DNA of 64,000 nucleotides from Octopus bimaculoides (Eukaryota), in NCBI RefSeq assembly GCF_001194135.2, contig NC_069005.1, positions 21,362,398-21,426,397 of the forward strand. Direction: 5' to 3'. Below, piece by piece: positions 25,120-58,921 of this stretch. Every line of letters begins with the position of its first letter. Within the stretch, counting starts at the first letter, position 1. The position numbers and the translations under genes are program-made. Below the pieces are notes generated by a model, which worked only from the letters and a program-made list of their open reading frames with translations, was not told the DNA's origin and made no database searches.

Positions 25120-27079
25120 AAATATTCATCAGAGAAAATAATGGATATTTGTGTGAAAAACGTATTTTCAGTCAAAACTAGAGACTACGAAAAATGTTTC
25201 GAATTGCAACCTTCACTGAATTTTGACCAGAATTTTCCACTGTTAGACATGCCAGATGAATTACTTAACAATGAGAATAAAAACTCGTTAGATGCTTTTG
25301 AAAACCCTGCTGTTGAGTATTCAGGAAATAATTCTCATATTCCATCCAAGAGATCATGTTCCTCCAAAGAATTTGATCTCAGTTTCCAAAGATCTTTTGT
25401 GTCTGCTCGTCAGTTAAGCCAGTCAGTCAATGATTCCGTGAAATCTGAAGTTGTACAGAGAGAAAATATAAGTGGGGAAGATTTTGTTGTTCCAACTTGT
25501 AACCTAAATGAAAATCTGTATGGAGATCTAGATGGTGAGTCATTGAAAGATAATGACAGGTCCAGCAACCAGTCTTCAGTTGAGGCTGGAAATCTTTCTG
25601 AGAGTAATTACAAGTCTGTTGAAAATATTGAAAGTAATAAAAAACACCAAATAAAATCAGAAAAGATAAAACCAATGTTTGGTAATCAAACAAAAAAGAT
25701 TCTTAAGCTCAAAGATAATAATAAATCATCCAAAAATAGTGGCAATATTGAAGAAATAAATGGTAAACAAGTAGCAAAAACCAATACTGCAAGTCCGCTT
25801 AGTAATAAATCTTCTCTAAAAGAGAACTCTGGAGACAATCAGGATAAACTTCACTGCAAAGCTAAAAGCCATGTTATTCATAAAACAAGCTCTCTGCAGA
25901 TGCCAAGCAAGAATAAAAACCAAAATCCTTCTAAGAAAAGCAAATCTTCTAAATCTAAACAAGAAAACAATGGATCTTGTAAGAATGTTTGTGAAGTTCC
26001 AAATTTTGAACAGTCTAATAATAATAATAGTAATAATTTTGCATCTGGCAATTTGAAAGAAAATGAAGAAAGTGAAAATGACAGTGTTTCTAATAAGGTA
26101 AAAGAAAAAAATTCTAAAAAAGTTCCACCTCTTAAAATCTCTGCTATAAATTCTGAGATTCATGGAAATTTTCCAAAATTTAAATCTGATTTAACAGAGA
26201 AATATGTGAAAGAAAATAAGAAACAAAAAAGAATGAAGTCTAAGAATACATCTTCAAACAGTTCTAATGATACACCAGCTTCTTCTGATGTTAGAAAAAC
26301 CTTTTCGATGGTTGTCAGTGAGCAAATTGCTGAGTCTAATAGTAATATGATTACAGAAAGGGAGACAGTTATTAAAAAGCTTGAAAATTATAAGATTCCA
26401 TTGAAGTCTAAAACAGCTGACAAGAAAAAAACTGAGAGAAAGGATGAAAAAGAGAATAATGGAAATATATCTAATGAGAAAGGTCCGGCTATTGTGTCAC
26501 CTACATTTGCTGACATGAATAGTATGAATAAGCCAAGCAAAGATGACTCTGTTGACACAGATGATGAAGATAGCATTTCAGATCTTTTCCAGAAAGAAAA
26601 TATTTATGAAACTTTGGAAAATATTAACAACTCAAAACAGAATGAACAGATATCGATTGCAAGAAAGATTGGTCTTCCTACAAGTGATTCTGAAAACAGT
26701 GTTGCTATTGAAAAACCAGTCAAAAGTAAACCTAAACTGAAATCTAAATCTGACAAACACGATAAAAATAAATCAAAGTCAATAAAGCACAAGGAAAAAG
26801 ATTCAGCATCTAATAAAACACTTCATCTTAAACAGAGTACTCATCAGTCTCCAGACTCATCAGCTAAAAAGATATCATCAAAAAAAATTAAACATTCATC
26901 TAAGGCAACTGAAGGCATTTCTTGCAAAAAGTCCAAAGCTCCTGATATATTTGATAAAAAGCAGGTTAAAGACAGCACTTTGGCTGTTTCTAAAAAGAAA
27001 AGAACACATATTGACAAAAACACTGAAAACATCAAGCTCAAAAAAGCAGATTTTAAAACAAAGTCTTTTAAGAAAAATA
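25120..27079 (+). CDS. Giant low-complexity coding exon (about 653 codons, K/S/N/E-rich, predicted disordered), putative N-terminal part of the ZCWPW-type gene
   Basis: Stop-free frame of about 2 kb in AT-rich DNA. Acceptor tttatattttcttttaaatcattgacag ends at 25119 and the frame reads KYSSEKIMDICVK, with ATG at 25141. Donor AATA|gtaagt at 27080 is phase 1, matching the downstream exons. The ORF-track tail SKYIYIYTHYSF is intronic read-through. Linkage to the PWWP exons is inferred from strand and phase. Confidence 0.85.
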
Positions 27080-27280
27080 GTAAGTATATATATATATATA
27101 CACATTATTCATTTACCTATCTTCAAGCAGTTGAATGCTAAGTAAACTCTTCATGTCTTTTATGCAAAAATTTCCAATCCTCAGTCAACTATCAGCTTTC
27201 TCTAAAATGTTTTGTAGTGACACTGTGTAACAAAATTAAAAAATTTTTTTTTGTTTTGGTCAGTGTTATTTCCTACTTGC

Positions 27281-27664
27281 TTGTTGTTGGCACTCCATCG
27301 CTTACGACGTCGAGGGTTCCAGTTGTTCCGATCAACGGAACAGCCTGCTCGTGAAATTAACGTGCAAGTGGCTGAGCACTCCACAGACACCTGTACCCTT
27401 AATGTAGTTCTTGGGGATATTCAGCTTGAGACAGTGTGACAAGGCTGACCCTTTGAATTACAGGCACAACAGAAACAGAAAGTAAGAGTGAGAGAAAGTT
27501 GTGGTGAAAGAGTACAGCAGGGTTCGCTACCATCACCTGCCGGAGCCTCGTGGAGCTTTAGGTGTTTTCGCTCAATAAACACTCTCAACGCCCGGTCTGG
27601 GAATCGAAACGCGATTCTATGACCGCGAGTCCGCTGCCCTAACCATTGGGCCATTGCGCCTCCA
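27281..27664 (-). mobile_element. Full-length tRNA-derived SINE family C
   Basis: Minus head ggaggcgcaatggcccaatggttagggcagcggactcgcgg...gtttcgattccc (A and B boxes) and a (CAA)n tail. Inserted into the left end of a family M MITE. Confidence 0.88.
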
Positions 27665-28155
27665 CCTATCTAACTGTAGCAGAAGCACAACCAACAGCAG
27701 AACATATGAGAATGAGTAACACCATCAACCATGATCCTGTAGCGATGAAATCAATTGTGTCCCTTTTTATTTTAATTGCAACACATAGAAAAAAATGGAT
27801 GAGTCCACATAAAACTTATATATGTCATGTGACTGGTGGTTTTTAATTATTTAAACAAACATACAACATTTATTATATATTCATTAGGAGTTCAATACAC
27901 GGTACATTCTTTCAGGGTTGATAAAATAAGTACCAGTCAAGCACTGAGGTCAATGTAATTGACTTACTCCCTCTCCTGAAGTTGCTAGTCTTGTGCCAAA
28001 ATTTGAAATTAGTAATTAAATGAAGATTTCCAGTATTAATATTAAGCCATAAATTTATTTTGTTGGATTACAAATGACTCAATCTAGTTCACTCCATATT
28101 TTGTACTTGGTACATAGCTTATTGACTCTCATAGGATGAAAGACAAACTTAATCC

Positions 28156-28555
28156 CAGGAATGGCTGTGTGGTAAGTAGCTTGCTTACCAACCACATGGT
28201 TCCGGATTCCGTGTTCAGTCCCACTGCGTGGCATCTTGGGCAAGTGTCTTCTACTATAGTCTCGGGCCGACCAAAGCCTTGTGAGTGGATTTGGTAGACG
28301 TAAACTGAAAGAAGCCCGTCGTATATATGTATATATATATGTGTGTGTTTGTGTGTCTGTGTTTGTCCCCCTAGCATTGCGTGACAACAAATGCTGGTGT
28401 GTTTATGTCCCTGTAACTTAGCGGTTCGGCAAAAGAGACCGATAGAATAAGTACCAGGCTTACAAAGAATAAGTCCTGGGGTCGATTTGCTCGACTAAAG
28501 GCGGTGCTCCAGCATGGCCGCAGTCAAATGACTGAAACAAGTAAAAGAGAGAGAG
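28156..28555 (+). mobile_element. SINE family A (young)
   Basis: Near-consensus copy. Confidence 0.88.
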
Positions 28556-29004
28556 ATCTAGAACTCATATTGGAAGAACATGAAGTACTCGGAGGCATTA
28601 GATCCTCTTGCAACTACGAAAATAACAAGCAAAAAGAACCCAAAAGTGGTTATTTTCTTGATGCTATTATGTTTGTAAATAGAATTAAAATATGCAAGAT
28701 CATATGTCATGTATAACAAAAGGAATCTTCTTTTAACAAGTGTTTGGTTGATAACAAGAACCATTGTCTTATAATTGTATGTTGCTCCAACTAGATGCTA
28801 AAGTTCAAATTAATGAAAGTCATTTCAGCTCAGGAAAATACTTGCATGTTGAAAATGGATATGAAGCAAATGTATGAAACAAAAAATTGACTTAAAACAA
28901 TTAAGAAAAGAAATTTGATTGACGTCTTTCTTAGTAACACAACATTGTATAATGAATTAATTAATCAATTGTTTTTCCAATTTATATATATTTTTTTTTA
29001 TCAG

Positions 29005-29019
29005 ATGGTTTTGCTGCAG
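29005..29019 (+). CDS. 15-nt microexon (N-G-F-A-A), phase 1-1
   Basis: ttttttttta-tcag|ATGGTTTTGCTGCAG|gtaatt. Long T tract, canonical AG and GT, and it keeps frame between 27079 and 34298. Confidence 0.6.

Positions 29020-30603: not shown

Positions 30604-30606
<3 letters not shown>
30270..30606 (-). mobile_element. 3' end of an RTE-like LINE encoding C2H2 zinc fingers, with 3' UTR stem-loop and (TA)n tail
   Basis: LAGLKSHLRTH, CGVCQRVCKSNGGLKRHVRIH and CNLCGCFFKTLSGLKSHIRRH (both C-x2-C-x12-H-x3-H), stop at 30323-30325, then a ggtggt...accacc stem and atatatat. Confidence 0.75.
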
Positions 30607-30668
<62 letters not shown>

Positions 30669-31397: not shown

Positions 31398-32796
31398 GTA
31401 TAGTCTTCTACCTAGTTGGCTCCTATCAAACCATCCAACCCATGCCTGCATGAAAAGTGGCCATTAAATGATGATGATGATACACACACATACACATACA
31501 TATTTACACCATAATCATTCAATATATGTTTTAGGGTATCTTTCATTGGCTAGGTGTTGGAAAATAATGAGCATGATTATTCATTTAATGGATTAAAATT
31601 ACAAATATTTCTTCTTTGAGGGGTAATTTTGGAGGAGCCAGAAGCTTTAATTCCACTGTTGTAGAAAGTAAAAGCTATTTCCCAAAACAGATCATGGGTC
31701 ATGCCTATGAGATCAAAACAATCTTATATCAGGAAATAGATGTTTTCTACTGTCTAAATATATTCGTTTCTTTGTGACAACTTTGCATGTAAAAAGATCC
31801 TAGATACTTAATAAGTTCATTCATCTAGCATGATTTCTGTAGATCATGAGAAATAAACCACCAGTTTTCTCTTGGCATGTACTTGCATATTTAAACATAT
31901 CAGAAAAAGTGTGTAAACAAGCCTTTTTTTTATATAGATAATAAAGTACACAAACACACACACACACACACACACACACGTTTAACAACTCAAAATTATT
32001 ATGAATGAGCTAGATAAACAAGAATGAAAAATCTTTTCCTTTTTCTCTATGTAAGATTATATCTTTATATAACAATTACATGGGTGGTTCAGGTATGATA
32101 ATCAGATTAAAACATTACTCCACCTCCATTTTAGGCTGTAAACAAAACCATAACTGGTATTATTATTACTGACAACCACTGAGAAGAGGCTTTTTTAAAG
32201 TTTCTTTTTTACTTGTTTCAGTCATTGGACTGCAGCCAAGCTGGGGCACTGCCTTGAAGTGTTTAGTTAAACAGATTGACCCCAGTGCTTATTTTTTTAA
32301 GCCTGATACTTATTCTATCAATCTCTTTTAATGAACTGCTAAGTTGTAGAGATGTAAATAAACCAACACTGGTTGTCAAGTGGTGGTGAGAGGGAAACAC
32401 ACAAAGAGATACACACATGGATATACTATACAAACACACATGTGCATGCACATACACACACATATGCATATATATATATATGTGACAGGCTTCTTTCAGT
32501 TTCTGTCTACCAAATCTACTCACAAAGCTTTGGTCAGCCCAGGGTCATAGTAGAAGACACTTGACCATGGTACCGTTCATTAGGACTGAACACAGAACCA
32601 TGTGGTTGGGAAGCAAGCTTCTTACTTCACAGCCATTCCTTTCAATGCTTTTTCTTAATTTTCTGATTAAGTTATATACATTTCCTGAAAAACTGTAAAA
32701 TTTTATGCTGTTTACATGATAGAAATTTTGACTGAAATACACAAATAAATAGAAATGTTATTAGAAATTAAGAGCTTTTAGAAAAGTTATTATCAA

Positions 32797-34297: not shown

Positions 34298-34369
34298 GAT
34301 CCATTCCTCATAAATCTAAAGTACCTTGCAAGAAAAAGTGCATGCAGGCAAGAAGTATATATGAATCTG
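34298..34369 (+). CDS. 72-nt exon GSIPHKSKVPCKKKCMQARSIYES, phase 1-1
   Basis: gtgtgcttctcctttag|GATCC...GAATCTG|gtaatt. Open in the phase demanded by the upstream exons. Confidence 0.7.
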
Positions 34370-34433
34370 GTAATTGTTGATTTATATATTTTATATATTA
34401 ATTCCTTTGGTTTGCATCTCTCTCTCTCTCTCT

Positions 34434-35131
34434 NNNNNNNNNNNNNNNNNNNNNNNNNNNNNNNNNNNNNNNNNNNNNNNNNNNNNNNNNNNNNNNNNNN
34501 NNNNNNNNNNNNNNNNNNNNNNNNNNNNNNNNNNNNNNNNNNNNNNNNNNNNNNNNNNNNNNNNNNNNNNNNNNNNNNNNNNNNNNNNNNNNNNNNNNNN
34601 NNNNNNNNNNNNNNNNNNNNNNNNNNNNNNNNNNNNNNNNNNNNNNNNNNNNNNNNNNNNNNNNNNNNNNNNNNNNNNNNNNNNNNNNNNNNNNNNNNNN
34701 NNNNNNNNNNNNNNNNNNNNNNNNNNNNNNNNNNNNNNNNNNNNNNNNNNNNNNNNNNNNNNNNNNNNNNNNNNNNNNNNNNNNNNNNNNNNNNNNNNNN
34801 NNNNNNNNNNNNNNNNNNNNNNNNNNNNNNNNNNNNNNNNNNNNNNNNNNNNNNNNNNNNNNNNNNNNNNNNNNNNNNNNNNNNNNNNNNNNNNNNNNNN
34901 NNNNNNNNNNNNNNNNNNNNNNNNNNNNNNNNNNNNNNNNNNNNNNNNNNNNNNNNNNNNNNNNNNNNNNNNNNNNNNNNNNNNNNNNNNNNNNNNNNNN
35001 NNNNNNNNNNNNNNNNNNNNNNNNNNNNNNNNNNNNNNNNNNNNNNNNNNNNNNNNNNNNNNNNNNNNNNNNNNNNNNNNNNNNNNNNNNNNNNNNNNNN
35101 NNNNNNNNNNNNNNNNNNNNNNNNNNNNNNN
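34434..35131. other. Assembly gap (698 N), the probable location of the CW-core exon
   Basis: It is the only N run between the exon at 34298-34369 and the exon at 44987. Other gaps: 4496-4589, 11776-11785, 17668-17677, 19602-19990, 21559-21806, 53164-53247, 56143-56351, 58033-58203, 61881-62608. Confidence 0.6.
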
Positions 35132-35339: not shown

Positions 35340-36402
35340 TATAACAAAGCAGTGGGGGGGGGAGAAAGTATATATATGATGCACTACTATTACTATTACA
35401 CGAGACTCAACACTATATGAAAGGCTCACAGTGAACTGCTTACCAACTTGAACTGCTAATTGCTCACAGTTCTTTAATTTATAACAATGAGTCAGTCCAC
35501 CTTTAGTCACTTGGTGGGTGGTCGGAATCCTTACACAAATACATACATATAGGCACAGATGTGGCTGTGTGGTAAGGAGCTTACTTCCCAACCACTTGGT
35601 TCTGTGTTCAGTCTCACTGTGTGGTACTTTGGACAAGTGTCTTCTATCATAGCCTTGGGCCAACCAAAACCTTGTGAGTGGATTTGGTAGACAAAAACTG
35701 AAAGAAGCCCACTATGTGTGTGTATTAGTGTCTAGGTTTGTCCTCTCACCACCACTTGACAACCAGTGTTGGTGTGTTATGTCCTGTAACTTAACATTTT
35801 GGCATAAGTGATTGATAGAATAAGTACTAATCTTAAAAAATAAGTCCTGGGGTTGATTTGTTCAATTAAAAACCCTTAAAGGTGGTGCCCCCAGCATGCG
35901 CGCAGTCAAATTACTGAAACAAGTAAAAGATATATATATATACAATGGACTTCCTTTAGTTTCCATTTACCGAATTCACTCACAAGGCTTTGGTTGGCCT
36001 GAGGCTATAGTCAAAGTCACTTGCTCAAAGTACCACACAGTGGGACTGAACCTGGAACCATGTGGTATGGAAGTAAACTGCTTTCCACACAACCATACCT
36101 AGGCCTCCTCTATTTATTTTTCATATAAATAACCCTACAGCAAAAACCTGTCCTTGTTGCTTTATCATACTTTAATCTCTCATCATCTGGCAAAAAAGCC
36201 ATCTTCCTCAATACTATCCACCACCTCAGTTGAGGGGGTCTTGTCTTGCAAATTACCTGATGACCTCACTGGTGGCAGTGCCACCTAAAATTGCACCCAA
36301 TACATTCTGTAAAGTAGTTGGCATTAGGATGAGCATCAAGCCATAGAAGCCATGCCAAACCAGACATAAGAGCTTGTCCCAGTTATCAGGCCTTTACTTC
36401 TT

Positions 36403-39165: not shown

Positions 39166-40416
39166 GTCTAGATGTACTTATCCTGGCTTCATCACTAAAC
39201 AATTCATTTTTAAAAACTAAGAAAACAGGAAAGTGTTAAGATGCTTTCCACATAGAGCATAGAAGAGAGATTAGATATTTCTAGAAGTTGTGTGGCTTAG
39301 TGTTTAGAGTGTTAGGTTCACAATCACATGGTTATGGGTTTGATTTCTGGACTGAGCAGTGTATTATTTTCTTGAGTAAAGTTTCATTTCATATTACAAA
39401 ACGTGGCCTCTTAACACCAACACAGCTCCAACAACTAAGTCAGTAGTTGGGAAACTGCAGGACCAGCCCAGAAAGCCAACTTTCCCAGAGAGGAAGAAGT
39501 AATCATACATGGCTGGATATCTTCTGTAATGTAATTCTTCGTCACCTGGGCTCACACTGACTGTAGTTCTTCATCACCTGACTTCACACCGACAGTAGTA
39601 CTTTGTCACCCAGCTTCACACCTGGTCAACTGACCACCATGCATTCACTCACCAGTTCATGTAGTCCATCTCAGTAAAAGCATGCCAAAAACATGCAGCA
39701 GGCTTTAAATCAAACACTTGATCAATGAACATTATTTCTAATTAGAATTAATCATGGATCCATTATTCATTTTCTCTTGTGGAACTAGAGAAAAGTATTC
39801 CAAGTAGTATCGTTTTAAATTGATACTACTAATTGTGAAGTTGCATGGTTCAGTGGTTAAAGCATTGGGCTCACAATCATATGGTAGTGAGTCTGATTCC
39901 CAGACTGGGCTGTGTGTTGTGTTCTTAAGCAAGACACTTATGCCTTTCTACAGATATATTTGTATGAACTGCATGAGGATTTAAGAGTTTTGGCCTTAAT
40001 TCAGATCACACAACATTTGTGTGATTTATGGTATTTATTTTGATTTCAGAATTTTTACATAATGTCAACTAGTCAGCTGTGAATTCTCAAGTGAAAATAA
40101 GAAATATTTCCTGATAAGTTTCACTGTGTGTTTTTGCCTAGAGTCATAACATACAATATATGGTAGAGTTTAAACTCATGACTTTTGTTAAAAGTTCTTC
40201 ACCTTAACCGCTCAGACTATTTTCTTCCTGGCAAACAAAGAACAAAAGTTATTTTTATATAAGACATTTGAAATGGAGAAATTTAGTACACATTCAATTA
40301 AATTCTCAATCTTTAATGTTGATTTGACATTTCTAATAGCCATAAAATTTTTCTCTAAGTTCTAGAGGATATAGAAAAGTAGTAAAGTGTCTTTGAAAAA
40401 AATAATTGTTAGTATA

Positions 40417-40797
40417 AGCACAGGAGTGGCTGTGTGGTAAGTAGCTTGCTTACCAACCACATGGTTCCGGGTTCAGTCCCACTGCGTGGCACCTTGGGCA
40501 AGTGTCTTCTACTATAGCTTCGGGCCGACCAAAGCCTTGTGAGTGGATTTGGTGGACAGAAACTGAAAGAAGCCCGTCATATATATGTATGTTTGTGTGT
40601 CTGTGTTTGTCACCCCCACCATCGCTTGACAACCAATGGTGGTGTGTTTACGTCCCTGTAACTTAGCAGTTCGGCAAAAAGAGACCGATAGAATAAGTAT
40701 TAGGCTTCCAAAGAATAAGTCCTGGGTTCGATTTGCTCGACTAAAAGGCGGTGCTCCAGCATGGCCGCAGTCAAATGACTGAAACAAGTAAAAGAGT
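40417..40797 (+). mobile_element. SINE family A
   Basis: Near-consensus copy. Confidence 0.88.
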
Positions 40798-41425
40798 AAA
40801 AAAAAAAAAAGAGTATTATGATAACATAACACAAGAAATCTTATATCAGTAACACACACTCATGTGTTTAATACTATGAATATACTTAGTATAATGAATG
40901 TATTTTCAGCTAAATTCACAGTTATAATGTATGTTTGAGTCGAGTCCTGTATAATATTTTATCTCAGATTATAACTACATTGCCACATATGCAAAGTGCC
41001 CCATTTTCTGAGAGTAGTTAGGATATTTAAAGTAACACCTATTTCCGAAAGACATTTTTATCGAGCACTTGATGATGTAGTTATTCATGCGGTTGAGTGA
41101 AGTAGCTTAATCTTTCATGTTTCTTCCACAAACTCCTTTGCTTACTTTAAAATGAGAATCCCATTTTTAAACTTTACATCATAACAACATACTTACCAGA
41201 CTTACTACAAAGATATGATGGCTTTGGCGAGAATGACAACTGAACAATTCTTTGATTGGCTATTTCTGTGCCATTAGTAACATTAGTCTATTTTTGCTGA
41301 TGTGTTCAAGGTTACTCATTAATAACAATGCTTACAACTAATAATGTGTTGCATATGTGGACTTTTGTGTCTGCAATCATTTTATTTCACTTATAACAGC
41401 AAAAGCAACACATTTTTATTGTATA

Positions 41426-41833
41426 ACTCTTTTACTCTTTCACTTGTTTCAGTCATTTGACTGTGGCCATGCTGGAGCACCGCCTTTAGTCGAACTAATC
41501 AACCCCAGGACTTATTCTTTGTAAGCTTAGTACTTATTCTATCGGTCTTTTTTGCCGAACTGCTAAGTTACAGGGACGTAAACACACCAGCATCGGTTGT
41601 CAAGTGATGTTGGAGGGACAAATACAGACACACAAACATACACACACACACATATATATATACATATATACAACGGGCTTCTTTCAGTTTCTGTCTACCA
41701 AATCCACTCACAAGGCTTTGGTCGGCCTGAGACTATAGTAGAAGACACTTGCCCAAGATGCCACACAGTGGGATTGAACCCAGAACCATGTGGTTGGTAA
41801 GCAAGTTACTTACCACACAGCCACTCCTGCGCC
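41426..41833 (-). mobile_element. SINE family A
   Basis: Near-consensus copy on the minus strand. An older + copy follows at about 41878-42210. Confidence 0.88.
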
Positions 41834-43401: not shown

Positions 43402-43807
43402 AGACGTAGGCATGGGTGTGTGGTAAGAAGTTTGCTTTCGAACCACATGATCCCAAGTTCAGTCTCATTGTGTGGCACTTTGGGCAAGTGTCTTCTACCA
43501 TATCCTCAGGCCAACCAAAGCCTTATGAGTATATTTGGTAGACAAAAACTGAAAGAAGCCCATCATATATATATATATATATATACGTCTGTGTCTGTGT
43601 TTGTCTCCCCGCCACCACTTCACAACTGGTGTTGGTGTGTTTTCACATCCCTGTAACTTAGCAGTTCAGCAAAAGAGATCAATAGAATAAGTACCAGGCT
43701 TTAAAGAATAAGTCCTGGGGTAGATGTATTCAACTAAAGATTCTTCAAGGTGGTGCCCCAGCTTGGCCACTGTTTAAAGACTGAAACAAGTAAAAGATTA
43801 AAAGATA
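43402..43807 (+). mobile_element. SINE family A (older)
   Basis: Full head-to-tail match with more substitutions. Confidence 0.82.
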
Positions 43808-43903
43808 TTAAAACAAGAGTTTTGTTAGGGAACATTTTCAAAGATTTTTATCACGCAAGTCAATAAATATTACATTCATAAAAAGTTAGTAAAACAATAA
43901 TTA

Positions 43904-44289
43904 TACTCTTTACTCTCTTTTACTTGTTTCAGTCATTTGACTGTGGCCATGCTGGAGCACCGCCTTTAGTCGAGCAAATCGACTCCAGGACTAATTCTTT
44001 GGAAGCCTAGTATTTATTCTATCGGTCTCTTTTTGCCGAAACACTAAGTTACGGGGACGTAAACACACCAGCATTGGTTGTCAAGCGATGGTGGGGGGAA
44101 AAACACAGACACACATATACATATATACGACGGGCTTCTTTCAGTTTCCGTCTACCAAATCCACTCACAAGGCTTTGGTCGGACCGAGGCTATAGTAGAA
44201 GACACTTGCCCAAGGTGCCACGCAGTGGGACTGAACCCGGAACCATGTGGTTGGTAAGCAAGCTACTTACCACACAGCCACTCCTGCGC
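43904..44289 (-). mobile_element. SINE family A (young)
   Basis: Near-consensus copy on the minus strand. Confidence 0.88.
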
Positions 44290-44589: not shown

Positions 44590-44986
44590 TTAACATTTTG
44601 GCAAGTTTGGGAGGCAACTTGAGATATGTTTTGATCTTATTAGACCTCCTCAGTCAAGCAAAGACTTTACTGTATTTGCAGGTGGCATCTCTGAGTAATT
44701 TCTTTAGTCAGTGATTTATTTCTTTAAATATGCTATTTTTTTCTGTACTTACTCATGTTCAGTTTGCACATCTTCATAATTATCTAATCACTACTTCAGC
44801 AAGTGTAATGAAATCCTATTTGCAGATGAGTTCTAATAAGGTAGAAACATGTCCAAAATTATCTCCTATACCTCAAAAAAATTAATATAAAATAGTTTTT
44901 GTCACAGAGCTGTTATTGTCTTTTCCTCACCACAGAGTAATTTTCATCTATGTTTTTTTTTTAATTATTCCTTTTTCTTACCCCAG

Positions 44987-45101
44987 ATACTACTCAAAAT
45001 GACTGTTCCATACCAGAGATAGACTATTGTGATGAAGAATTTATTTTTACCCGTTACACAGAAGGTTCACTTGTGTGGGCAAGAGTGGAAGGTTATCCTT
45101 G
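44987..45101 (+). CDS. ZCWPW1: ZCWPW-type exon: C-terminal end of CW zinc finger and first strands of PWWP (DTTQNDCSIPEIDYCDEEFIFTRYTEGSLVWARVEGYPW)
   Basis: Acceptor ttattcctttttcttaccccag and donor TG|gtaagt, phase 1-2. NDCSIPE is the last-Cys motif of CW fingers (NxCxxPE) and GSLVWARVEGYPW is a canonical PWWP start. CW immediately followed by PWWP defines the ZCWPW family. ZCWPW1 versus a ZCWPW1/2 co-ortholog is not resolved. Confidence 0.85.
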
Positions 45102-47146
45102 GTAAGTATTGCTACTAAGATTATCATATCTCGGCAACTGAAATATAGCACAACACTGAAAATTTGTAGTAACCTGCTAAAAATAACATCATTTTTACTT
45201 TTGGAACATAGTTTATAATTAGATAGATGCATACATACATACATACATAGACAAACAGACAGACTGGTTTATTGCTTACAATTGGCATAATATTTACGAA
45301 AAATATAAAGGTTGTTTAGTATGTCAATTAGATCATCATCGTCATCATCATCGTTTAACATCTGTTTTCCATGCTGGCATGGGTTAGATGGTTTGACTGG
45401 AGCTGGTAAGGCCAGGGGCTGGACCAAGCTCCATTGTCTGTTCTGGCATGGCTTCTATGGCTGGATGCCTTTCCTAATGCCAACCACTCCATAGAGCAGA
45501 ATTTGAACTCAGAACGTAACGGCAGACGAAATACCGCTAAGCATTTCGCCCAGCGTGCTAACGTTTCTGCCAGCTCGCCACCTTATGGAAGATCAATAAT
45601 AAATAACCGATGCATCATGTGGCTTATTAGTTAGAGTATTCAGCTCATGATCATAAGATTATGAGTTCAGTACCTAGCGATGCATTGTGTCCTTGAGCAA
45701 TACACTTTATTTCACATTGCTCCAGTCCACTTCGCTGGCAAAAATTCTGTATCACGCTGAATCCCCATGAGAACTACGTTAAGGGTACTTGTGTCTGTGG
45801 AGTGCCACTCACTTGTTAATTTCATGAGCAGGCTGTTCTGTTGAGTGGATCATCTGGAACTCTTGTCTTTGTAGTCGATGGAGAACTAGATAAAATATGT
45901 ATGGCTAAGGATCTTGCTTCTCAACCAAATGGTGTTCCATTCAGTCCCACCATATGGTACTTTGGACAAGTATCTTATGCTCTAACAATTCTGAAATGAA
46001 CATTTTATGTGACTGTGTATATAAGTTGATATCTGAACCTATTGAAAATTTTACGGAAACAACAAGAAATTATCTTGTTAAAACATCGGACATAAAAATC
46101 TAAACACTTGGCTGTGTGGTTAAGAAGCTCGTTTGACAACCAGATGGTTTTGGGTTCAGTCCCACTGTACAGCACCTGGTGCAAGTGTCTTCTACTGTAA
46201 CCGCGAACCAGACAATACTTTGTGAGTGAATTTTGTAGACAGAAACTCTATGGAAGCCCATCATGTGTATATGTGTGTGTGTGTGTGTGTCCACCACTGC
46301 TTGACAGCCAGTGTTAACTTGTTTACATCCTAAGTTTAGTAGTTTTGAAAACGAGATCAATACCAGACTTTAAAAAATAAATACTGAAGTCAATTTGTTT
46401 GACTAAATCCTTGAAGGTGGTGTCCCTGCATAGCTGCTGTTCAATGAGTGAAAAAGTAAAAGATGGGGAAAAAAAAAAACAGAACACAGTCAAGCATTAA
46501 ACTAGCTTGCAAGGTAATGCATTGTATATGCTAGTGACTCATGCTCTCTACTTGAACTTATCCAAGTGAAATCTTATCAGTGTGGTCATGAATCACAATG
46601 CATTATACAGAAATGGACTAAACATAATAAACAATTTTACTGAATGTCTCTCAATGAGAAGACATTTTCTATTTTTTCCATGATTGATAGTAAAGAAAAT
46701 AAGTGCTGTACTTTCCTACATGATGTTAAAACTCAAATCTGTAAATGGTTTTAGTGATAAATGTGAACATTGTCGTTATCTTATCCAGCGAGCATAATGC
46801 AAAAAATAAACAAATAAATAAATAAAATACAAAAATTTTTTAAAAACCAGTCGTTCATAAGCCATACTATATAGATGTGAGAAGTGTTTGTTCCATATAT
46901 GCAATGCAGAATTGGTTTTAGCTAGATCATTTATAATGCACAAAGTTACTTTCATGGTTTTATAATTTTTTATGAGTTGGCAAATAATTAAACAACAAAT
47001 CCCTCTTTTAAAATGGTGATTCCTATTGTGCACAGGCATGGCTGTGTGATTAAGAAGTTTGTTTTGGGGTCTGATTCCACCTTACAGCACCTTGAGCAAG
47101 ATGTCTTGTACCCTATCATAGGTAGAGACCTGTTGTATGTGTGTAC

Positions 47147-51671: not shown

Positions 51672-54600
51672 TTAAGGAAAAATGGAAATGTGGTTGCTGA
51701 GATGAATTTTATGGATGGGTTCACATAATTTATTGGCATGGGAAGATAATCCAAAGCTAGTCCAACAGTCTTGCATTGGTAGTTATATTTGTGGCAGAAT
51801 GATGCTGCAAGAAACAGATATAGTATTCATTAGTATAAAAGTATTTAAGAACAGGTTTGGATAATCCCATATATTTTCTCTGTTAACAGTCTGTTCATAT
51901 TTGGTGTTGCACTCACAACGCACACACGTGCTTCAAGTAGAACAGATATTCCAGTTTAATTGCTTTAGTTCTCTTCATTTAAATTTAGATCAGCTGCAGT
52001 AAGAGTTTGATACAAAATAGAATTTGATTTTGATTTTTTTTTTCCCCCATTTCATATATTGACTCAGCTTGGCTGTGAGGTGAAGAAGTTTGCTTTGCAA
52101 CCATATGATTTTGTGTTCAGTCCCACAGTGCGACACCTTGGGCAAGTGTTTTCTACTGTTGTACACCAGGCCAACCAATGCTTTATGAGTGAATTTAGTA
52201 GACAGAAACTTTGTGGAAGCCTGCCGTGTGTGTATGAATGTGTTTGTGTGTGTGTGTGTGTGTAAGGCTGTATGAATGGCTGTGTTTGTCCCTCCTCTGC
52301 CAATTGACAACCAATGTTGATTTGTTTACATTTCTATAACATTGCAGTGTGGCAAAAGCAACTTATAGTCTAAGTTCCAGGCTTAAAAAAAGGAAGTATT
52401 GGGGTCAGTTCGTTTGAAGTGGTGCCCCAGCATAGTCACAGTTCAATGACTGAAACAAGCAGATATCTACACTCAGTATAATTTTTCTTGTGTAATTCTA
52501 TATTATCACAATTCCTGCTTTATGTCAGTGTCTTGTCTTTCTATTATCATTCTGTTATTATCATACTGTAATAATTTCTTCATATATTTCATATGAAACA
52601 TTAGAAGATGTAAGAACTGGATATTTCAATATTTGCAGAATATCGAGTAGTCTTAGAACCAGAAAAAAGAATATTTGTAAAAATTTATGTTCACAATTTT
52701 TTGTGTGTTTGTTTGTTTTCGGTTACATTGTTATCTTCCCAACCACTTTGTGATTTCAGAATAATATAGCTGTGAACTAAAGGAGAAATCTTTACGAGTA
52801 ATTGTATTCGTTGTTTTGTATGGTTTACAACAAATGTTGGTCATGTATGTGTGTGTGGGGGGGGGGGCACTGGTTTTATTACTGTTATTTCCAGCTAGTG
52901 TTTGTTGCACTCTTAACTCTTCCATAAGTTGATTTCCTAGTTTTTTTTTTTTTTAGTCTTTGTTGGTTGGACCGGTGGACCAATGGAGAAATTTGATTCA
53001 TCACCATTAATATTGATTGAGAGTTGATGAGTTGGAAATCTAAAATCAATAAATAGACTCAGAGGCAGAATGCATTTACAAATTTTTAACCGTATGCATA
53101 CAAAGAAAAAAACAAAAATTCAATCTCAGTGCATCTTGTATAATTTTATTTTGTTTTATATATNNNNNNNNNNNNNNNNNNNNNNNNNNNNNNNNNNNNN
53201 NNNNNNNNNNNNNNNNNNNNNNNNNNNNNNNNNNNNNNNNNNNNNNNTATATTGTGTCACAGTCTAGGAATAATAGCAGTTGTTGGTTACAGGTATCCAA
53301 CAGGCTAGTCTCTGGTGCATTGCATTTTTATCAACAAGAATGACAAGCAAGTTTGTGTAACTGAGCGAAGAAGAAACAATTTGTTATGTTTATTTATTTA
53401 TTTTCATCTTCACAATGACTTTCATATCCTTTATTGATCTGCATCTGGAAGACAAGGGACATCTTTTATTGATATGGGTCAATAAGACCTGGGACGAAGT
53501 TTTGAAAGCTGATCTGAAAATGCTGACCCCTTACAAAGGAGATGACAGAGGACCAAGCTATGTGGTGCATTGTTAAACTTGAAAAGACCTGCCCACCACA
53601 ACAGAATTGGGATCCTAAAACCAAGGTTCCACTTAAAAAGCACTTGTGATGGTGCCGTATAAAAAGGTCCCAGTACACTCCTAATGAAGCAGTTGGCATT
53701 AAGAAGGGCATCTAGCCATAGAAACCAAGCCAATACAGATTACGGTACCTGGTGCAGCTCCTGGCCTTACCAGTTTCTGCCAAGCCGCCCAACCCATGCC
53801 AGCATGGAAAACAGACATTAAACGATGATGATGATGACGATCTGATGTGTGTGTGTGTGTAATGGGCTCTCCCATTAATTTTGACATATTCTGACCTAAC
53901 GGCACTTTTTCTTCTTTTGTTTTAGTTCTGATCTCCATGTTTCTTATAAGACTTTAATCTAGCCAACAATTTAGAAAGGTCCTTAAATTGTACTAAAGAA
54001 AGGATTGTTATACAAAGCATCTGGCATGCTAGTTCAAGACTTTGTCTTTACTCTCAGTTCTTTAAGATGATCCAGACTGCTCAGTATAATGAGCTTCTGT
54101 GCAGTTTCCACTTACTAAATTCCACATACAATTTATTGATCATCCTGGGCCTATGGCAGTAGAAGACACCTTCTGAACCCAGAAACTTTGCAGATGCAAT
54201 ACAAACTTCCTTAACTACACAGCCATTCTTGTTCCCATGTGTAATTAGATTTTTGCCTTCTGCCATGCTTTTTTCTGATTCTCAGACTTTTTGCCTTTAC
54301 TTCAAGTCACTTATAGTCACAATCTTTTGTTATTCTCATAATTTTCCCTTGCTTGAAACCATCCTGTCCCTCATCACATTCTATCTCCATTTACACATTT
54401 TTCTTTAATGAAACATTTCTCATAACTCTACCAGTTGGGGGTCTTTTGTATTTTGTACATATTAAATATATATTGGTGAGAATGTAGATATGAATATTTG
54501 TGTGTGTTCATACAATATATTTATAAAATACGATGCAAGGACATTTTGCTTCTTTTTTTTTTTTTTTTTTTTTTTTTTTTCTTTTGTTAATGCTAATATT

Positions 54601-55809
54601 TCTGAAAAGCCTTCAACTCTAATTGGCCTTGATTTCAACATACACTTTTTTGTTATTGTTTCAATGTATGCTTTCATTTTCACATTGATTGTACATTCTT
54701 TGTTCCTGTTATCCAATTTCTGACTCAATTTTAAATCGACTTCATGTTGATTGGGTTTTTGTCTTGGTTTTTTTTTTCATACCATTTTTTTTTCTTTTTT
54801 TTACCCTAATAACCAGAAGTTGCTTGCTGTAGTTATTTAGCCACCTAACTCTCAATGGTTATTTATATTCATGTGCGTGTGTGTGTGAATTGAACTAGAT
54901 TGTTTTTCCTTTAACTTTGCGTGTCACATTGGTTCCAATAATCCTCTGTCAGAATGTGATTTCATATGAGATCATCCACCAAGCCTACGAATTCATTTTC
55001 AATATATGTAACATTGTTTGTAATTTCTATAAGCCTTCCTATCATCTTTCACTGGCCCAAGTTTCATTACCATTCACATCAAATACAATCTGGATATTTT
55101 ATATGCAAAGAAAATCCCTTTAATCTCTGCACGTGTAAAAAAAATTGTCTGGACTTTTTTTTCCTTTTCTTTCAACTAGGAATGATTCCAATCATTGTGC
55201 TTTAATTAGTCTTTCCTGTTTCATGCATTGACGATCCTGGATAATGCAATAAAATAAATAAATAAATGAATAGAATCTGTTTTTGTTTTTTTTTCTTAAT
55301 TTTTAATTTTTTATTTTACAACTTTCAGAGTCTCATCAGATGAAGACATAATTTATGGATAATAGTTACATTTGCTCACACATGTTACACTTGTATTTTT
55401 AATTTTCTCTCAGCATATTAGCAATGTGATTGTTGCCTTTGAGTTCATATTGATTTCTTTAGATCAATATTGATTCGTTCTGACTAGGCACAAAGCCAAT
55501 TTTTTACAAAAAGAAGAACAGAGTCAATTAGATTGTCTTCAGTATATTTCTGGTACTTAGTTTGTTGACCTCACAGAAACAAAAGATTTCTAGAAATCAA
55601 TTTTGTTTATAATACTAGTGTGTGTGTGTGTGAATTTATTTTTTGATATCTGTCGGAACCTGTATATCTCTAATTCCCTTGTTCTCCCCACTCACTCTGT
55701 ATCTGACTGTTGATCTACCTATGTCCATCTGAGACTCCATCCGGTTATGTAAGCTTTATAATACTTGTCACAACACACCTACAGATGAGTAATAATGGTG
55801 TTGGCAATG

Positions 55810-56408
55810 CTTGCCACCACCACTGTTATCATCAGCGCTACCACCACCACCACCACCATCAACGTTGTCATCGTCATCATCATCATCACTATCGTCATCA
55901 CTACCACCACCATCATTGTCATCATCATCATTACTATCCTCATCATTACCACCACCATCATCATCATCACTACCACCACCATCATTGTCATCATCATCAT
56001 CATCATCATCATTACTATCCTCATCATCACCACCACCATCATCATTGTCATCATCATCATTACTATCCTCATCATTACCACCACCATCATCATCATCACT
56101 ACCACCACCATCATTGTCATCATCATCATTACTATCCTCATCNNNNNNNNNNNNNNNNNNNNNNNNNNNNNNNNNNNNNNNNNNNNNNNNNNNNNNNNNN
56201 NNNNNNNNNNNNNNNNNNNNNNNNNNNNNNNNNNNNNNNNNNNNNNNNNNNNNNNNNNNNNNNNNNNNNNNNNNNNNNNNNNNNNNNNNNNNNNNNNNNN
56301 NNNNNNNNNNNNNNNNNNNNNNNNNNNNNNNNNNNNNNNNNNNNNNNNNNNTCATCACCACCACCACCATCATCATCGCTATTGTCATCACCATCACAAC
56401 CACCGCTG

Positions 56409-56444
<36 letters not shown>

Positions 56445-56510
56445 CTATCCTCATCATCACCACCACCACCATCATCATCGCTATTGTCATCACCATCACA
56501 ACCACCGCTG

Positions 56511-56553
<43 letters not shown>
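55810..56553. repeat. Compound CAT/CAC trinucleotide satellite with higher-order repeat units (contains an N gap)
   Basis: Recurrent blocks of about 69 bp (caccatcattgtcatcatcatcattactatcctcatcattaccaccacc...) left of the gap and a longer repeated block (catcgctattgtcatcaccatcacaaccaccgctgtc...) twice to the right. Confidence 0.9.
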
Positions 56554-56555
<2 letters not shown>

Positions 56556-57687
56556 CAATAATGGCCTCTTTGTGTTTAATTTCACCATATTCCACTACAT
56601 CCTTATCCTTTCAAAATCAATATCAAAGAAACAAATTTTTTTTTTTTTTCTTCCTTCTTGGAATAGATAGTACTCCAAAATACAACCTCAGCTTCAAATA
56701 ACTCATCCACTATTAATCATAAATCACCTAAATTTCTGTTATTGTTGCTATTGTTGCTGCTGTTGTGTTTTTATTTTTATGTATTTATGTATTTTATTTG
56801 CTGCTGGTTTTTGTATCTGATTTTCATCTCATTTCTTTTTTTCCTCCTCTCAGAAATGGAGTAATTGGATGGTTCTGCTAATGTTCATATTTGCATATGT
56901 CTTTATTCATGTGTTTTTTTTTTGTTTTTTTTCTTTTTTGTCTAAGGCACAAGACTGATTTTTGTAATGGGAAAGAACAAAATAATGTTGTCGATACTTA
57001 TTCTATAAACTATGGCAGAACATGAATTTAGAACTGAGTGGAATGAAATATAAAATATTTTAATTTCCTTTTTATTTTATTTTTTTCTTCTTCTGGTTTA
57101 TAAAGTCAATCAGGAGAATTGAAGATAATGATACGACTTTCGTAGGGTCTCTTAGGTTGGTAAGATTTGTGTGTATGTTATTCAATTATAAATGTTTTCT
57201 GGTGAATGTCTACAAGAAAAGTGTAGGTAGATAAAGAATTCAAGAAGGATTGTGTGAACTAGCATCTAGTGTAGGATCTGAGAGGTGAGTCACAGTGGGG
57301 GGTATGAGAGGGAGGGAGACAGGTGCGCCTGGCGGAACTGACTGACGGAATATGCAGAATGCAGACATTTCAGAAGAGAAGAAACTATTGAGTAGTAGTA
57401 GTGGTAGTGGTAGTAGTAGTAGAGGGGAAAGAAAAGAAGTAGCATTTTTGTAAGCCAATGGGGCAAAGCATATTAATGAATGAATCTTTGCCAATCAGCT
57501 ACTTGGTTTTCTTTTTCTTTTAGGTATGTTCGAGTATTTTTGCGTGCATAGCATTGCACTGCCCCAGATCTTGAGTCGAGGCATCAACCATGTTAATCTC
57601 ACCAGCCTGGGATGGCCTCCTAAGGCTTTGAGTACGGTCCTCCTCCTCCTCCTCCAATGCCTAAGTTATTGTAAAAAGAACAGATAT

Positions 57688-58032
57688 AGGCGCAGGAGTG
57701 ACTGTGTGGTAAGTAGCTTGCTTACCAACCACATAGTTCTGGGTTCAGTCCCACTGTGTGGCACCTTGGGCAAGTGTCTTCTACTATAGCCTCGGGCCAA
57801 CCAAAGCCTTGTGAGTGGATTTGGTAGACGGAAACTGAAAGAAGCCCGTCGTATATATGTATGTATGTGTGTGTGTGTCTGTGTTTGTCTCCCTAGCATT
57901 GCTTGACAACCAATGCTGGTGTGTTTATGTCCTTGTCAATTAGCGGTTCGGCAAAAGAGACCGATAGAATAAGTACTAGGCTTACAAAGAATAAGTCCCA
58001 GGGTCGATTTGCTTGACTAAAGGTGGTGCTCC
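57688..58032 (+). mobile_element. SINE family A running into an N gap
   Basis: ggcgcaggagtgactgtgtggtaagtagcttgcttacc... Confidence 0.88.
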
Positions 58033-58206
58033 NNNNNNNNNNNNNNNNNNNNNNNNNNNNNNNNNNNNNNNNNNNNNNNNNNNNNNNNNNNNNNNNNNNN
58101 NNNNNNNNNNNNNNNNNNNNNNNNNNNNNNNNNNNNNNNNNNNNNNNNNNNNNNNNNNNNNNNNNNNNNNNNNNNNNNNNNNNNNNNNNNNNNNNNNNNN
58201 NNNATA

Positions 58207-58550
58207 TTCATCATCATCATCATCGTTTAATGTCCGCTTTCCATGCTGGCATGGGTTGGACAGTTTGACTGAGGACTGGTGAGCCAGAGGCTGTACCAGG
58301 CTCAATCTGATCTGGCAAAGTTTCTACAGCCGGATGCCCTTCCTCACACCAACCACTCCGAGAGTGTAGTGGGTGCTTTTATGTGCCACCGGCACGAGGG
58401 CCAGTCAGGCAGTTCTCGCAACAACCACGCTCAAAAGGTGATTTTACATGCTACCTGCACAGGAGCCTGTCTGGCAGCACTGGCAACGACCACACTCAAA
58501 TGTTGTTTCTCACGTACCGCTGGCACATGTGCCGGTAAGGCGGTGATCTG
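58207..58550 (-). mobile_element. Family D element
   Basis: (CAT)n tail and the ggatgcccttcc...ccaaccactccgagagtgtagtgggtgc core. Confidence 0.75.
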
Positions 58551-58845
58551 AACACAGTCGGACTGTATCCGAAACCATGTAGTTGAATAGCAAGATTCTT
58601 ACCACACAGCCCTGCTGGAGCCTTTTTTTTTTCTTTGCCCAGTTTGGTAGAAGGAACAATGCCCATGGCTGTTGTGTAGAATGTTAGTGGTACAGCCACA
58701 AACATCCTAAATCATACCCAAAAAATACCATTTCACTGATTGACACTAACTCACACACCAACATGATTTTTTTTTTTTTAATTGGTTTTTATTATTTCAA
58801 ATTAATGAACTTATCAGCTGTTTTTTTTTTCTTTTGAAATTCTAG

Positions 58846-58921
58846 GTGGCCCGCAATGGTTGAAATAGATCCTGATTACACATCATACTTTGAATTTGAA
58901 GAAGAAGATAGTATGTATCCT
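58846..58921 (+). CDS. ZCWPW1: PWWP exon [25 protein letters not shown], phase 2-0
   Basis: Acceptor ttttttttttcttttgaaattctag and donor CCT|gtaagt. Joining TG|G completes GYPWWP across a 13744-nt intron. The 25 codons resemble human ZCWPW1 WPGMIESDPDLGEYFLFTSHLDSLP (recalled from memory; needs an alignment). Confidence 0.87.

What the first reader, a model, noticed from the sequence alone, without database searches (positions are those of the whole stretch)
25120..58921. ZCWPW1-like dual histone-mark reader hidden in a probable cephalopod genome
Seen: five in-phase exons that splice to ...KSFKKN-NGFAA-GSIPHK...IYES-[gap]-DTTQNDCSIPE...[23 protein letters not shown]...SMYP. The PWWP exons are too short for the ORF track. 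Established: in mammals ZCWPW1 reads the PRDM9-written H3K4me3 (CW) and H3K36me3 (PWWP) marks at meiotic hotspots, and across vertebrates its presence tracks PRDM9. The Tyr and second Trp of GYPWWP, two of the three aromatic-cage positions, are intact here. Inference: a mollusc may run a PRDM9-like hotspot-reading pathway, or ZCWPW may have an older PRDM9-independent role.
Basis: partly seen in the sequence, partly recalled or inferred. Interest (0 to 1): 0.72.

Follow-up and report, generated by a model that had tools for sequence, protein, structure and literature searches.

The report
Octopus ZCWPW1-type gene, CW exon unassembled
The window holds the first two thirds of the Octopus bimaculoides gene for a ZCWPW1-type chromatin reader (CW zinc finger plus PWWP domain); the call is correct, but the family is already annotated in other cephalopods and many invertebrates, so the main gain is a repaired gene model.

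Summary
Four of its five exons (25120-27079, 34298-34369, 44987-45101, 58846-58921, + strand) have AG/GT borders, stay in frame, and are joined in RNA contigs from three runs and in raw reads. The 15-base 'NGFAA' exon (29005-29019) is absent from those contigs, which join 27079 directly to 34298.

The contigs carry exactly 108 bases between 34369 and 44987 that are nowhere in the window. They begin GTWVECTQLNC, the start of a CW zinc finger. In Octopus vulgaris the matching exon lies about 260 bases after exon 3, inside the stretch that corresponds to the gap 34434-35131. The other three gaps are intronic.

The window is Octopus bimaculoides. Its public protein model is truncated at that gap. 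Orthologues carry Pfam zf-CW and PWWP. In a full-library search the best 150 representatives all span both domains; every vertebrate cluster I named is ZCWPW1, and none of 30 is ZCWPW2.

All three PWWP aromatic-cage residues are present. Only one of the four H3K4me3-contact residues of human ZCWPW1 is identical.

PRDM9 presence in octopus, germline expression and histone binding were not tested. This is a new member of a known kind, of low to moderate interest.

The parts
25120..27079 (+). First coding exon (1960 nt). Start codon at 25141 (MDICVKNVF...). It encodes about 650 residues of K/S/N-rich sequence with no Pfam domain.
   Evidence: There is an AG at 25118-25119, an in-frame stop at 25114-25116, and the donor A|GTAAGT at 27079/27080. 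It is 92% identical to O. vulgaris P0002 residues 1-645. RNA runs hold all of its sampled words. Its last 30 nt are joined to 34298 in three contigs. The 25120 acceptor itself was not checked by RNA; contig lengths imply 200-380 nt of further 5' sequence.
29005..29019 (+). Candidate 15-nt micro-exon 'NGFAA', not supported as a constitutive exon.
   Evidence: It has AG/GT borders and is in phase, but all three RNA contigs skip it. It is absent from the P0001, P0002, P0003 and Sepia proteins. The sequence and splice sites are kept in O. vulgaris with one substitution, but the surrounding intron is 95-97% identical as well.
34298..34369 (+). Exon 3 (72 nt): (R)SIPHKSKVPCKKKCMQARSIYES, ending in phase 1.
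   Evidence: RNA contigs X3, X5 and X18 match 34298-34370 with no mismatch. It aligns to Argonauta P0003 residues 759-786.
34434..35131 (.). Assembly gap that hides the 108-nt CW zinc-finger exon (GTWVECTQLNC..., 36 codons).
   Evidence: The contigs carry exactly 108 nt between 34369 and 44987. The first 30 nt read CACCTGGGTGGAATGTACTCAGTTGAATTG and are absent from the window even with 3 mismatches. The O. vulgaris exon at L001 about 28131-28239 lies within the stretch collinear with the gap.
44987..45101 (+). Exon 4 (115 nt): the end of the CW finger (fourth Cys, ...NDCSIPEIDY), the linker, and the first PWWP strand up to GYPW.
   Evidence: Acceptor ccccag|AT and donor TG|GTAAGT. The RNA contigs match 44982-45103 exactly. 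It is 95% identical to P0002 residues 680-720. Pfam PWWP scores 32 bits on the window-encoded peptide alone.
58846..58921 (+). Exon 5 (76 nt): (W)[25 protein letters not shown]. The PWWP domain continues in exons beyond the window.
   Evidence: The contigs and X36 raw reads match. The loose end before it is the end of exon 4. The loose end after it reads ASYHVVFFGK, which is not in the window. In O. vulgaris the next exon is about 15 kb further on, which would be past 64000 here.

Best explanation
Window 25120-58921 (+) is the 5' two thirds of the Octopus bimaculoides orthologue of the animal ZCWPW family. Its closest vertebrate relative is ZCWPW1.

The protein (about 820-990 residues in other octopods) has a long disordered K/S/N-rich N-terminal part encoded by exon 1. 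Next comes a CW-type zinc finger, whose main exon is lost in the assembly gap 34434-35131 and whose last Cys is in exon 4. About 15 residues later a PWWP beta-barrel follows, encoded by exons 4 and 5 and by at least two exons beyond the window. After the PWWP comes a conserved helix.

Inferred mechanism: the two adjacent reader modules bind one H3 tail or nucleosome, with the CW reading methylated H3K4 and the PWWP aromatic cage reading methylated H3K36, as mouse and human ZCWPW1 do. This would tether the protein to chromatin that carries both marks.

What is shown: gene structure, splicing, domain architecture, family assignment and cage residues. What is inferred: histone specificity, and any link to meiosis or PRDM9.
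For: - Splicing and the hidden exon.
- Species and truncated public model: P0001 is 99% identical and ends IYESGNC, a read-through into the intron before the gap.
- Domains: zf-CW at 1e-10 and PWWP at 1.3e-14 in P0002, and the same in P0003 and the Sepia-cluster P0124.
- Family: phmmer over 1.84 billion representatives gave 381 hits at E<=1e-10. The best 150 each match in one stretch over CW plus PWWP, at 35-57% identity beyond the 77% Argonauta orthologue. Clusters are named ZCWPW1 in Sepia pharaonis, Biomphalaria, Patiria, Ciona and arthropods, and in bat, lizard, rattlesnake, sawfish, anchovy and tarpon. None of the 30 clusters looked up is named ZCWPW2.
- CW: it aligns without gaps to human ZCWPW1 CW (2e61, 2.4e-10) and with a gap to ZCWPW2 CW (4o62, 4.2e-08).
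- PWWP cage: Y, W and F align with NSD2 Y233, W236 and F266. The F is seen in O. bimaculoides RNA.
- Fold: the AlphaFold2 model has mean pLDDT 82.5, and its barrel superposes on NSD2/NSD3 PWWP1 at 0.9-2.1 A over about 69 columns.
- Downstream motif: TRLK(L/I)YSFS.RFSG is shared with other ZCWPW1-type proteins.
Against: - The CW finger of O. bimaculoides itself was read for only 11 residues; the rest rests on the exon's length and on the orthologues.
- Of the four residues that bind H3K4me3 in human ZCWPW1 (W256, E301, T302, W303; PMC7314539), octopus keeps W256 and has Ile, Asp and Tyr at the other three. Cuttlefish has no aromatic residue at the W303 position. Trimethyl-K4 reading is therefore not assured.
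- No genuine vertebrate ZCWPW2 full-length sequence was available for a proper tree. The neighbour-joining tree has no support values.
- The transcript is held by RNA runs of at least 14 samples in 5 studies. This does not look like a strictly germline gene, although the tissues are coded.
Confidence: 0.9

Rival explanations
1. It is a pro-orthologue of both vertebrate paralogues (ZCWPW1 and ZCWPW2), or a ZCWPW2 orthologue, rather than a one-to-one ZCWPW1 orthologue.
For: [quoted passage not shown] On that view every invertebrate gene is co-orthologous to both. The oyster gene is called Zcwpw2 in PMC12111275. The neighbour-joining tree nests the vertebrate ZCWPW1 clade among invertebrate sequences without support values.
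Against: A 2026 preprint reports both Zcwpw1 and Zcwpw2 in nearly all of 28 cnidarians, which implies an older split. The vertebrate sequences among the 150 best hits that I named are all ZCWPW1. The only hit named ZCWPW2-like (Styela, P0087) scores far lower (3e-10 against 1e-25 to 1e-31) and sits apart in the tree. The CW loop length matches ZCWPW1, not ZCWPW2.
Confidence: 0.3
2. The exons are the N-terminal PWWP1 region of an NSD-type H3K36 methyltransferase or of MSH6, not a ZCWPW gene.
For: The best PDB sequence and fold matches of the PWWP part are NSD2 PWWP1 (8e-14; Foldseek 1e-06), NSD3 PWWP1 and MSH6.
Against: The PDB holds only the CW constructs of ZCWPW1 and ZCWPW2, so it cannot show a ZCWPW PWWP. 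A CW finger lies directly upstream in the same transcript. The orthologous proteins are 816-991 residues long and have no Pfam domain besides zf-CW and PWWP, so no SET or MutS domain. The transcript contigs run only about 580-680 nt beyond exon 4.
Confidence: 0.02
3. It is an HDGF-related protein 2 (the RefSeq name of the O. vulgaris orthologue) or an 'autophagy-related protein 11' (the RefSeq name in Biomphalaria).
For: These are the names given by NCBI's pipeline.
Against: HDGF-family PWWP structures match only at E 0.008-0.05, against 1e-13 for NSD2. No CW match in the PDB is to an HDGF-family protein. Other annotations of the same Biomphalaria cluster, and of the Sepia cluster, say ZCWPW1.
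Confidence: 0.01
4. The architecture is the same, but the job is somatic or general: a broadly expressed reader of H3K4me/H3K36me chromatin with no dependence on PRDM9.
For: The transcript is held by RNA runs of at least 14 samples from 5 studies. ZCWPW-type genes occur in flatworms (Macrostomum, Spirometra) and many arthropods. Prdm7/9 was not found in the two flatworms sampled by Vervoort et al. (PMC4760075). The lid residues of the CW are not conserved in cephalopods.
Against: In mouse the protein is mostly restricted to testis and acts at PRDM9 sites (PMC7237205, PMC7494361, PMC7314539). In oyster, Prdm9 and Zcwpw2 are both high in male gonad (PMC12111275). A PRDM9 orthologue with a male-gonad EST exists in the mollusc Lottia (PMC2779102). 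The tissue identity of the octopus runs is hidden, so broad expression is not shown.
Confidence: 0.4

Closest known systems
[quoted passage not shown]
   Same: A CW finger directly followed by a PWWP domain. The KWR and PWWP motifs are present. The CW aligns without gaps (2e61). Identity is 41-46% over about 125-155 residues to bat, lizard and snake ZCWPW1. The GYPWWPAM and YHV.FFG..VSRAW blocks and the helix motif downstream of the PWWP are shared.
   Different: The N-terminal part is about 650 residues, low in complexity, and has no detectable SCP1-like region. E301, T302 and W303 of the H3K4me3 pocket are Ile, Asp and Tyr. Meiotic role, PRDM9 dependence and testis expression are unknown for octopus.
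Vertebrate ZCWPW2
   Same: The same two-domain architecture. Its CW matches at 4e-08.
   Different: The score is lower, and the CW loop needs a gap. No ZCWPW2-named cluster was found among the 30 looked up from the 150 best representatives.
Cephalopod and other mollusc ZCWPW-type proteins already in databases (Sepia pharaonis A0A812D2N4 'Zinc finger CW-type PWWP domain protein 1'; O. vulgaris P0002; Argonauta hians P0003; Biomphalaria KAK6965190.1; oyster Zcwpw2)
   Same: Orthologous: 87% (O. vulgaris), 77% (Argonauta) and 57% (Sepia cluster) identity in the relevant regions, with the same exon structure in O. vulgaris.
   Different: The O. bimaculoides public model (A0A0L8G6W1) stops at the gap and has no recorded domain.
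NSD2/NSD3 PWWP1 and MSH6 PWWP
   Same: These are the closest solved PWWP folds, with the same three cage residues.
   Different: They belong to enzymes with SET or MutS domains and have no adjacent CW finger. The resemblance is at domain level only.
MORC3/MORC4 CW fingers
   Same: The CW fold is shared, matching at E about 1e-06.
   Different: There is no PWWP domain, they sit in an ATPase context, and the match is weaker than to ZCWPW1 or ZCWPW2.

Membership tests
ZCWPW family (ZCWPW1 type) | CW-type zinc finger with four Cys and the KWR motif | tested here: met
   Pfam zf-CW scores 1e-10 (P0002), 7.8e-10 (P0003) and 1.8e-11 (P0124). In O. bimaculoides RNA the first 11 residues, GTWVECTQLNC, and the exon length of 108 nt are seen. 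The fourth Cys (NDCSIPE) is in window exon 4. The KWR triplet itself was not read in O. bimaculoides.
ZCWPW family (ZCWPW1 type) | PWWP domain directly C-terminal to the CW finger, with an exact PWWP motif | tested here: met
   GYPWWP spans the exon 4/5 join, which RNA confirms. Pfam PWWP scores 32 bits on the window peptide and 54.9 bits on P0002. The linker is about 15 residues.
ZCWPW family (ZCWPW1 type) | Nearest vertebrate relatives are ZCWPW1 rather than ZCWPW2, NSD or MSH6 | tested here: met
   All 150 best representatives span both domains. Six vertebrate clusters are named ZCWPW1; the lamprey and one fish cluster are unnamed; none of the 30 clusters looked up is named ZCWPW2. No supported maximum-likelihood tree with genuine ZCWPW2 was built.
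ZCWPW family (ZCWPW1 type) | H3K4me3-contact residues of human ZCWPW1 CW (W256, E301, T302, W303) | tested here: inconclusive
   W256 is kept. E301 is Ile, T302 is Asp and W303 is Tyr in Octopus (the residue list is from PMC7314539). Sepia has Pro at the W303 position. T302 is not conserved even in mouse.
ZCWPW family (ZCWPW1 type) | PWWP aromatic cage (three aromatic residues) | tested here: met
   Y, W and F align with NSD2 Y233, W236 and F266. The first two are in the window. The third is in the RNA continuation ASYHVVFFGK.
ZCWPW family (ZCWPW1 type) | Conserved region downstream of the PWWP (reported by Wells et al., PMC7494361) | tested here: met
   The motif TRLK.YSFS.RF is present in Argonauta, in the O. 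vulgaris locus (L001 90779-90859) and in Sepia, and aligns with the motif in insect, frog and sponge sequences. It lies outside this window.
ZCWPW family (ZCWPW1 type) | At least 90% match to the 31 invariant residues used by Wells et al. to call orthologues | not tested
   The residue list was not retrieved.
PRDM9-ZCWPW1 hotspot system | A PRDM9 with KRAB, SSXRD, an active SET domain and a fast-evolving zinc-finger array in the same genome | not testable with these tools
No paper in the library combines PRDM9 with a study of octopus or cephalopod genes. PRDM9 is reported in the molluscs Lottia (PMC2779102) and Crassostrea (PMC12111275).
PRDM9-ZCWPW1 hotspot system | Germline (meiotic prophase) expression | not testable with these tools
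All that can be said is that at least 14 samples of 5 studies hold the exon.
NSD histone methyltransferases | AWS-SET-postSET catalytic domain and PHD fingers in the same protein | tested here: not met
   Pfam finds only zf-CW and PWWP in the full-length orthologues.

The most novel reading that the evidence does not exclude
Octopods keep a working PRDM9-type writer together with this ZCWPW1-type reader. If so, the positioning or repair of meiotic recombination through dual H3K4me3/H3K36me3 marks would operate in cephalopods, and would therefore date back at least to the bilaterian ancestor.
Probability: 0.2. Interest if true: 0.6.

Novelty: new member of a known kind. Interest (0 to 1): 0.25.

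Why it matters
The practical gain is a corrected gene model. The only O. bimaculoides protein model the searches returned stops at an assembly gap and lacks both reader domains, and RefSeq names for mollusc orthologues ('HDGF-related protein 2', 'autophagy-related protein 11') are misleading.

Biologically it adds a cephalopod data point to an open question: did the PRDM9/ZCWPW partnership, established in vertebrates and recently argued for cnidarians, also exist in protostomes, or does ZCWPW have an older PRDM9-independent role? The gene's presence alone does not decide this.

Tried and rejected
- Pattern scan of all six frames for CW motifs: no CW finger is in the window's letters. This first suggested there was no CW finger; RNA and the orthologues then overturned that.
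The 5' UTR exons and DNA reads across the gap were therefore not examined.
- A word-index search with a 167-residue CW-PWWP query returned only two fragments. A profile query and the full-library search were needed instead.
- PDB sequence and fold searches rank NSD2 PWWP1 first. I rejected this as a family assignment because the PDB holds no ZCWPW PWWP structure.
- Rfam gave no match in the window.
- The supplements of the 2026 preprint are not held.

Full report
**Observation.** With borders placed on canonical AG/GT sites, the five exons concatenate to one open frame of 746 codons. The exons are 25120-27079, 29005-29019, 34298-34369, 44987-45101 and 58846-58921. The window is 65% A+T and holds ten runs of N.

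**RNA evidence.** Public RNA runs of the same organism hold the exons but not the flanking intron: 0.36 of the words of a 301-nt stretch whose exon is 115 nt. Three assembled transcript contigs (3214, 3054 and 1935 nt, from runs X3, X5 and X18) match exons 3, 4 and 5 without mismatch.
- In X18, window 45101 is contig position 1258 and 58846 is 1259.
- The loose letters before 58846 are the end of exon 4. Raw reads of run X36 also cover exon 5, with the mate bias expected of a + strand RNA.
- The contigs join 27079 directly to 34298, giving KKN-R-SIPHK. The 15-nt 'NGFAA' exon is absent from them, and also from the public octopus, Argonauta and cuttlefish proteins.
- Its sequence and splice sites persist in O. 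vulgaris with one substitution, but the surrounding intron is equally conserved. It may be a rare alternative exon or nothing. I could not test this, because read laying was withdrawn.

**The gaps.** Between 34369 and 44987 every contig carries exactly 108 nt (36 codons, phase kept) that are nowhere in the window.
- The first 30 nt translate, with the split codon, to GTWVECTQLNC.
- In the O. vulgaris locus L001, fetched through the orthologous protein, the corresponding exon (GTWVECTQLHCHKWRWLQDVHDPLLIPHNWICDMNP) starts about 260 nt after exon 3.
- Window 34433 aligns to L001 27933 and window 35151 to L001 28500. The unread stretch 34434-35131 therefore corresponds to 566 bp that contain this exon.
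- The gaps at 53164, 56143 and 58033 lie in the exon 4-5 intron and hide no exon of these transcripts.
- After exon 5 the RNA continues ASYHVVFFGK. That exon is not in the window; in O. vulgaris it lies about 15 kb downstream, which here would be beyond 64000.

**Organism and existing annotation.** Exon 1 is 99% identical to UniProt A0A0L8G6W1 of Octopus bimaculoides. That entry is an 'uncharacterized protein' of 673 residues ending IYESGNC, which is a read-through into the intron just before the gap, and it has no recorded domain. The O. vulgaris orthologue (824 residues, RefSeq name 'hepatoma-derived growth factor-related protein 2 isoform X3') and the Argonauta hians orthologue (991 residues) carry Pfam zf-CW (1e-10, 7.8e-10) and PWWP (1.3e-14, 1.1e-14) and nothing else.

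**Family.** In the PDB the PWWP part matches NSD2 PWWP1 best (8e-14), then MSH6. However, the PDB holds only the CW constructs of ZCWPW1 and ZCWPW2, so it cannot discriminate on the PWWP. The CW part matches ZCWPW1 (2.4e-10, no gap) ahead of ZCWPW2 (4.2e-08, gapped) and MORC3/4 (about 1e-06).
- A profile search of the word-indexed library returned named hits that are almost all 'zinc finger CW-type PWWP domain protein 1(-like)': sea urchin, frogs, turtles, a fish, a bryozoan, spiders, butterflies and a sponge. One ZCWPW2-like tunicate sequence scored far lower.
- A full phmmer pass over 1.84 billion representatives gave 1053 hits at E<=0.001 and 381 at E<=1e-10. The best 150 each cover CW and PWWP in a single stretch.
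- Of the 30 clusters whose names I looked up, those carrying a family name say ZCWPW1. They include Sepia pharaonis, Biomphalaria, Patiria, Ciona, beetle, wasp, spider and crab, plus bat, lizard, rattlesnake, sawfish, anchovy and tarpon. None says ZCWPW2.
- A neighbour-joining tree of 160 domain regions groups the octopods with the cuttlefish cluster, among other invertebrate sequences and next to a vertebrate ZCWPW1 clade. It has no support values.
- I therefore file the gene as ZCWPW family, ZCWPW1 type. Whether invertebrate genes are one-to-one ZCWPW1 orthologues or co-orthologues of both paralogues is disputed in the literature. PMC7237205 places the split at the vertebrate ancestor, while the 2026 preprint 10.64898/2026.09.07.749791 finds both paralogues in cnidarians. 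It is not settled here.

**Residues and fold.** Aligned to full-length NSD2, octopus Y, W (GYPWWP) and F (YHVVFFG) correspond to the cage residues Y233, W236 and F266 (roles from 10.1101/2020.11.25.398586). The third is seen in RNA.
- For the CW, the residues that bind H3K4me3 in human ZCWPW1 are W256, E301, T302 and W303 (PMC7314539).
- Octopus keeps the first and has Ile, Asp and Tyr at the others. Cuttlefish has no aromatic residue at the last position.
- An AlphaFold2 model of the O. vulgaris CW-PWWP region (19-row alignment, mean pLDDT 82.5) gives a beta-barrel that superposes on NSD2/NSD3 PWWP1 at 0.9-2.1 A over about 69 columns.

**Mechanism.** What is shown is a spliced, expressed gene for a protein with adjacent CW and PWWP modules and an intact PWWP cage. 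By homology with mouse and human ZCWPW1 (PMC7237205, PMC7494361, PMC7314539), I infer combined reading of methylated H3K4 and H3K36 on one nucleosome. The methylation state preferred by the CW is uncertain, because its lid residues differ.
- A meiotic, PRDM9-linked role is possible but untested.
- PRDM9 orthologues exist in molluscs: Lottia, with a male-gonad EST (PMC2779102), and oyster, where Prdm9 and Zcwpw2 are both high in testis (PMC12111275).
- The Prdm7/9 subfamily is inferred ancestral to bilaterians (PMC4760075).
- I found no paper on PRDM9 in cephalopods and could not search an octopus genome.
- ZCWPW-type genes in flatworms and many arthropods, and detection of the octopus transcript in at least 14 samples of 5 studies, leave room for a PRDM9-independent or broader role.

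**Novelty.** The family, its presence in invertebrates 'from porifera to human' and a cuttlefish entry named ZCWPW1 are already public. What is new is limited: the O. bimaculoides model is truncated by an assembly gap, the reader domains exist in its transcripts, and some RefSeq names for mollusc orthologues mislead. I rate it a new member of a known kind, of low to moderate interest.

Noticed in passing
window 2473-2920, 4590-4985, 6861-7246, 28150-28550, 32201-32660, 35540-35930, 40413-40817, 41426-42214, 43405-44288, 52067-52459: An interspersed repeat of about 400 bp has at least 12 diverged copies (65-89% identity). Two head-to-head inverted pairs lie inside the exon 3-4 intron. RNA word depth over these copies is enormous (up to about 1e5), with thousands of chimeric 'joints', which is typical of a high-copy transcribed element. 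A>G and T>C are the most frequent differences; this could be copy divergence or A-to-I editing of hairpins.
   Followed up: partly
window 19180-19600 (+), next to gap 19602-19990: An ORF (MDNRAESDKCRICGQNSETVWHITSHC...) has a weak match to Pfam zf-RVT (E 0.054). It is probably the tail of a retrotransposon ORF2, cut by an assembly gap.
   Followed up: partly
window 55710-56700, around gap 56143-56351: A triplet-repeat, low-complexity stretch reads as His-, Ser-, Ile/Thr- or Met/Val-rich ORFs in every frame. It probably caused the assembly gap.
   Followed up: no
L001 (O. vulgaris) 90779-90859 versus 104086-104148: There are two alternative 3' ends. RefSeq isoform X3 (P0002) ends ...KVFVICLGCRLLVDISSR, whereas the exon at 90779 encodes the conserved TRLKIYSFSKRFSGSW motif found in Argonauta, Sepia and other ZCWPW1-type proteins. 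Isoform X3 also skips exon 3.
   Followed up: partly
clusters of P0125, P0133, P0203, P0199: Automatic names for ZCWPW-type proteins are inconsistent. Examples are 'putative autophagy-related protein 11' (Biomphalaria), 'HDGF-related protein 2-like' (Patiria), 'DNA mismatch repair protein Msh6-like' (Argiope) and 'nucleolar protein dao-5-like' (Ornithodoros).
   Followed up: no
clusters of P0164 (Macrostomum lignano) and P0214 (Spirometra): CW-PWWP proteins of this family occur in flatworms, a phylum in which Vervoort et al. did not find Prdm7/9 in the two species they sampled (PMC4760075). This could be a natural test of PRDM9 independence.
   Followed up: no
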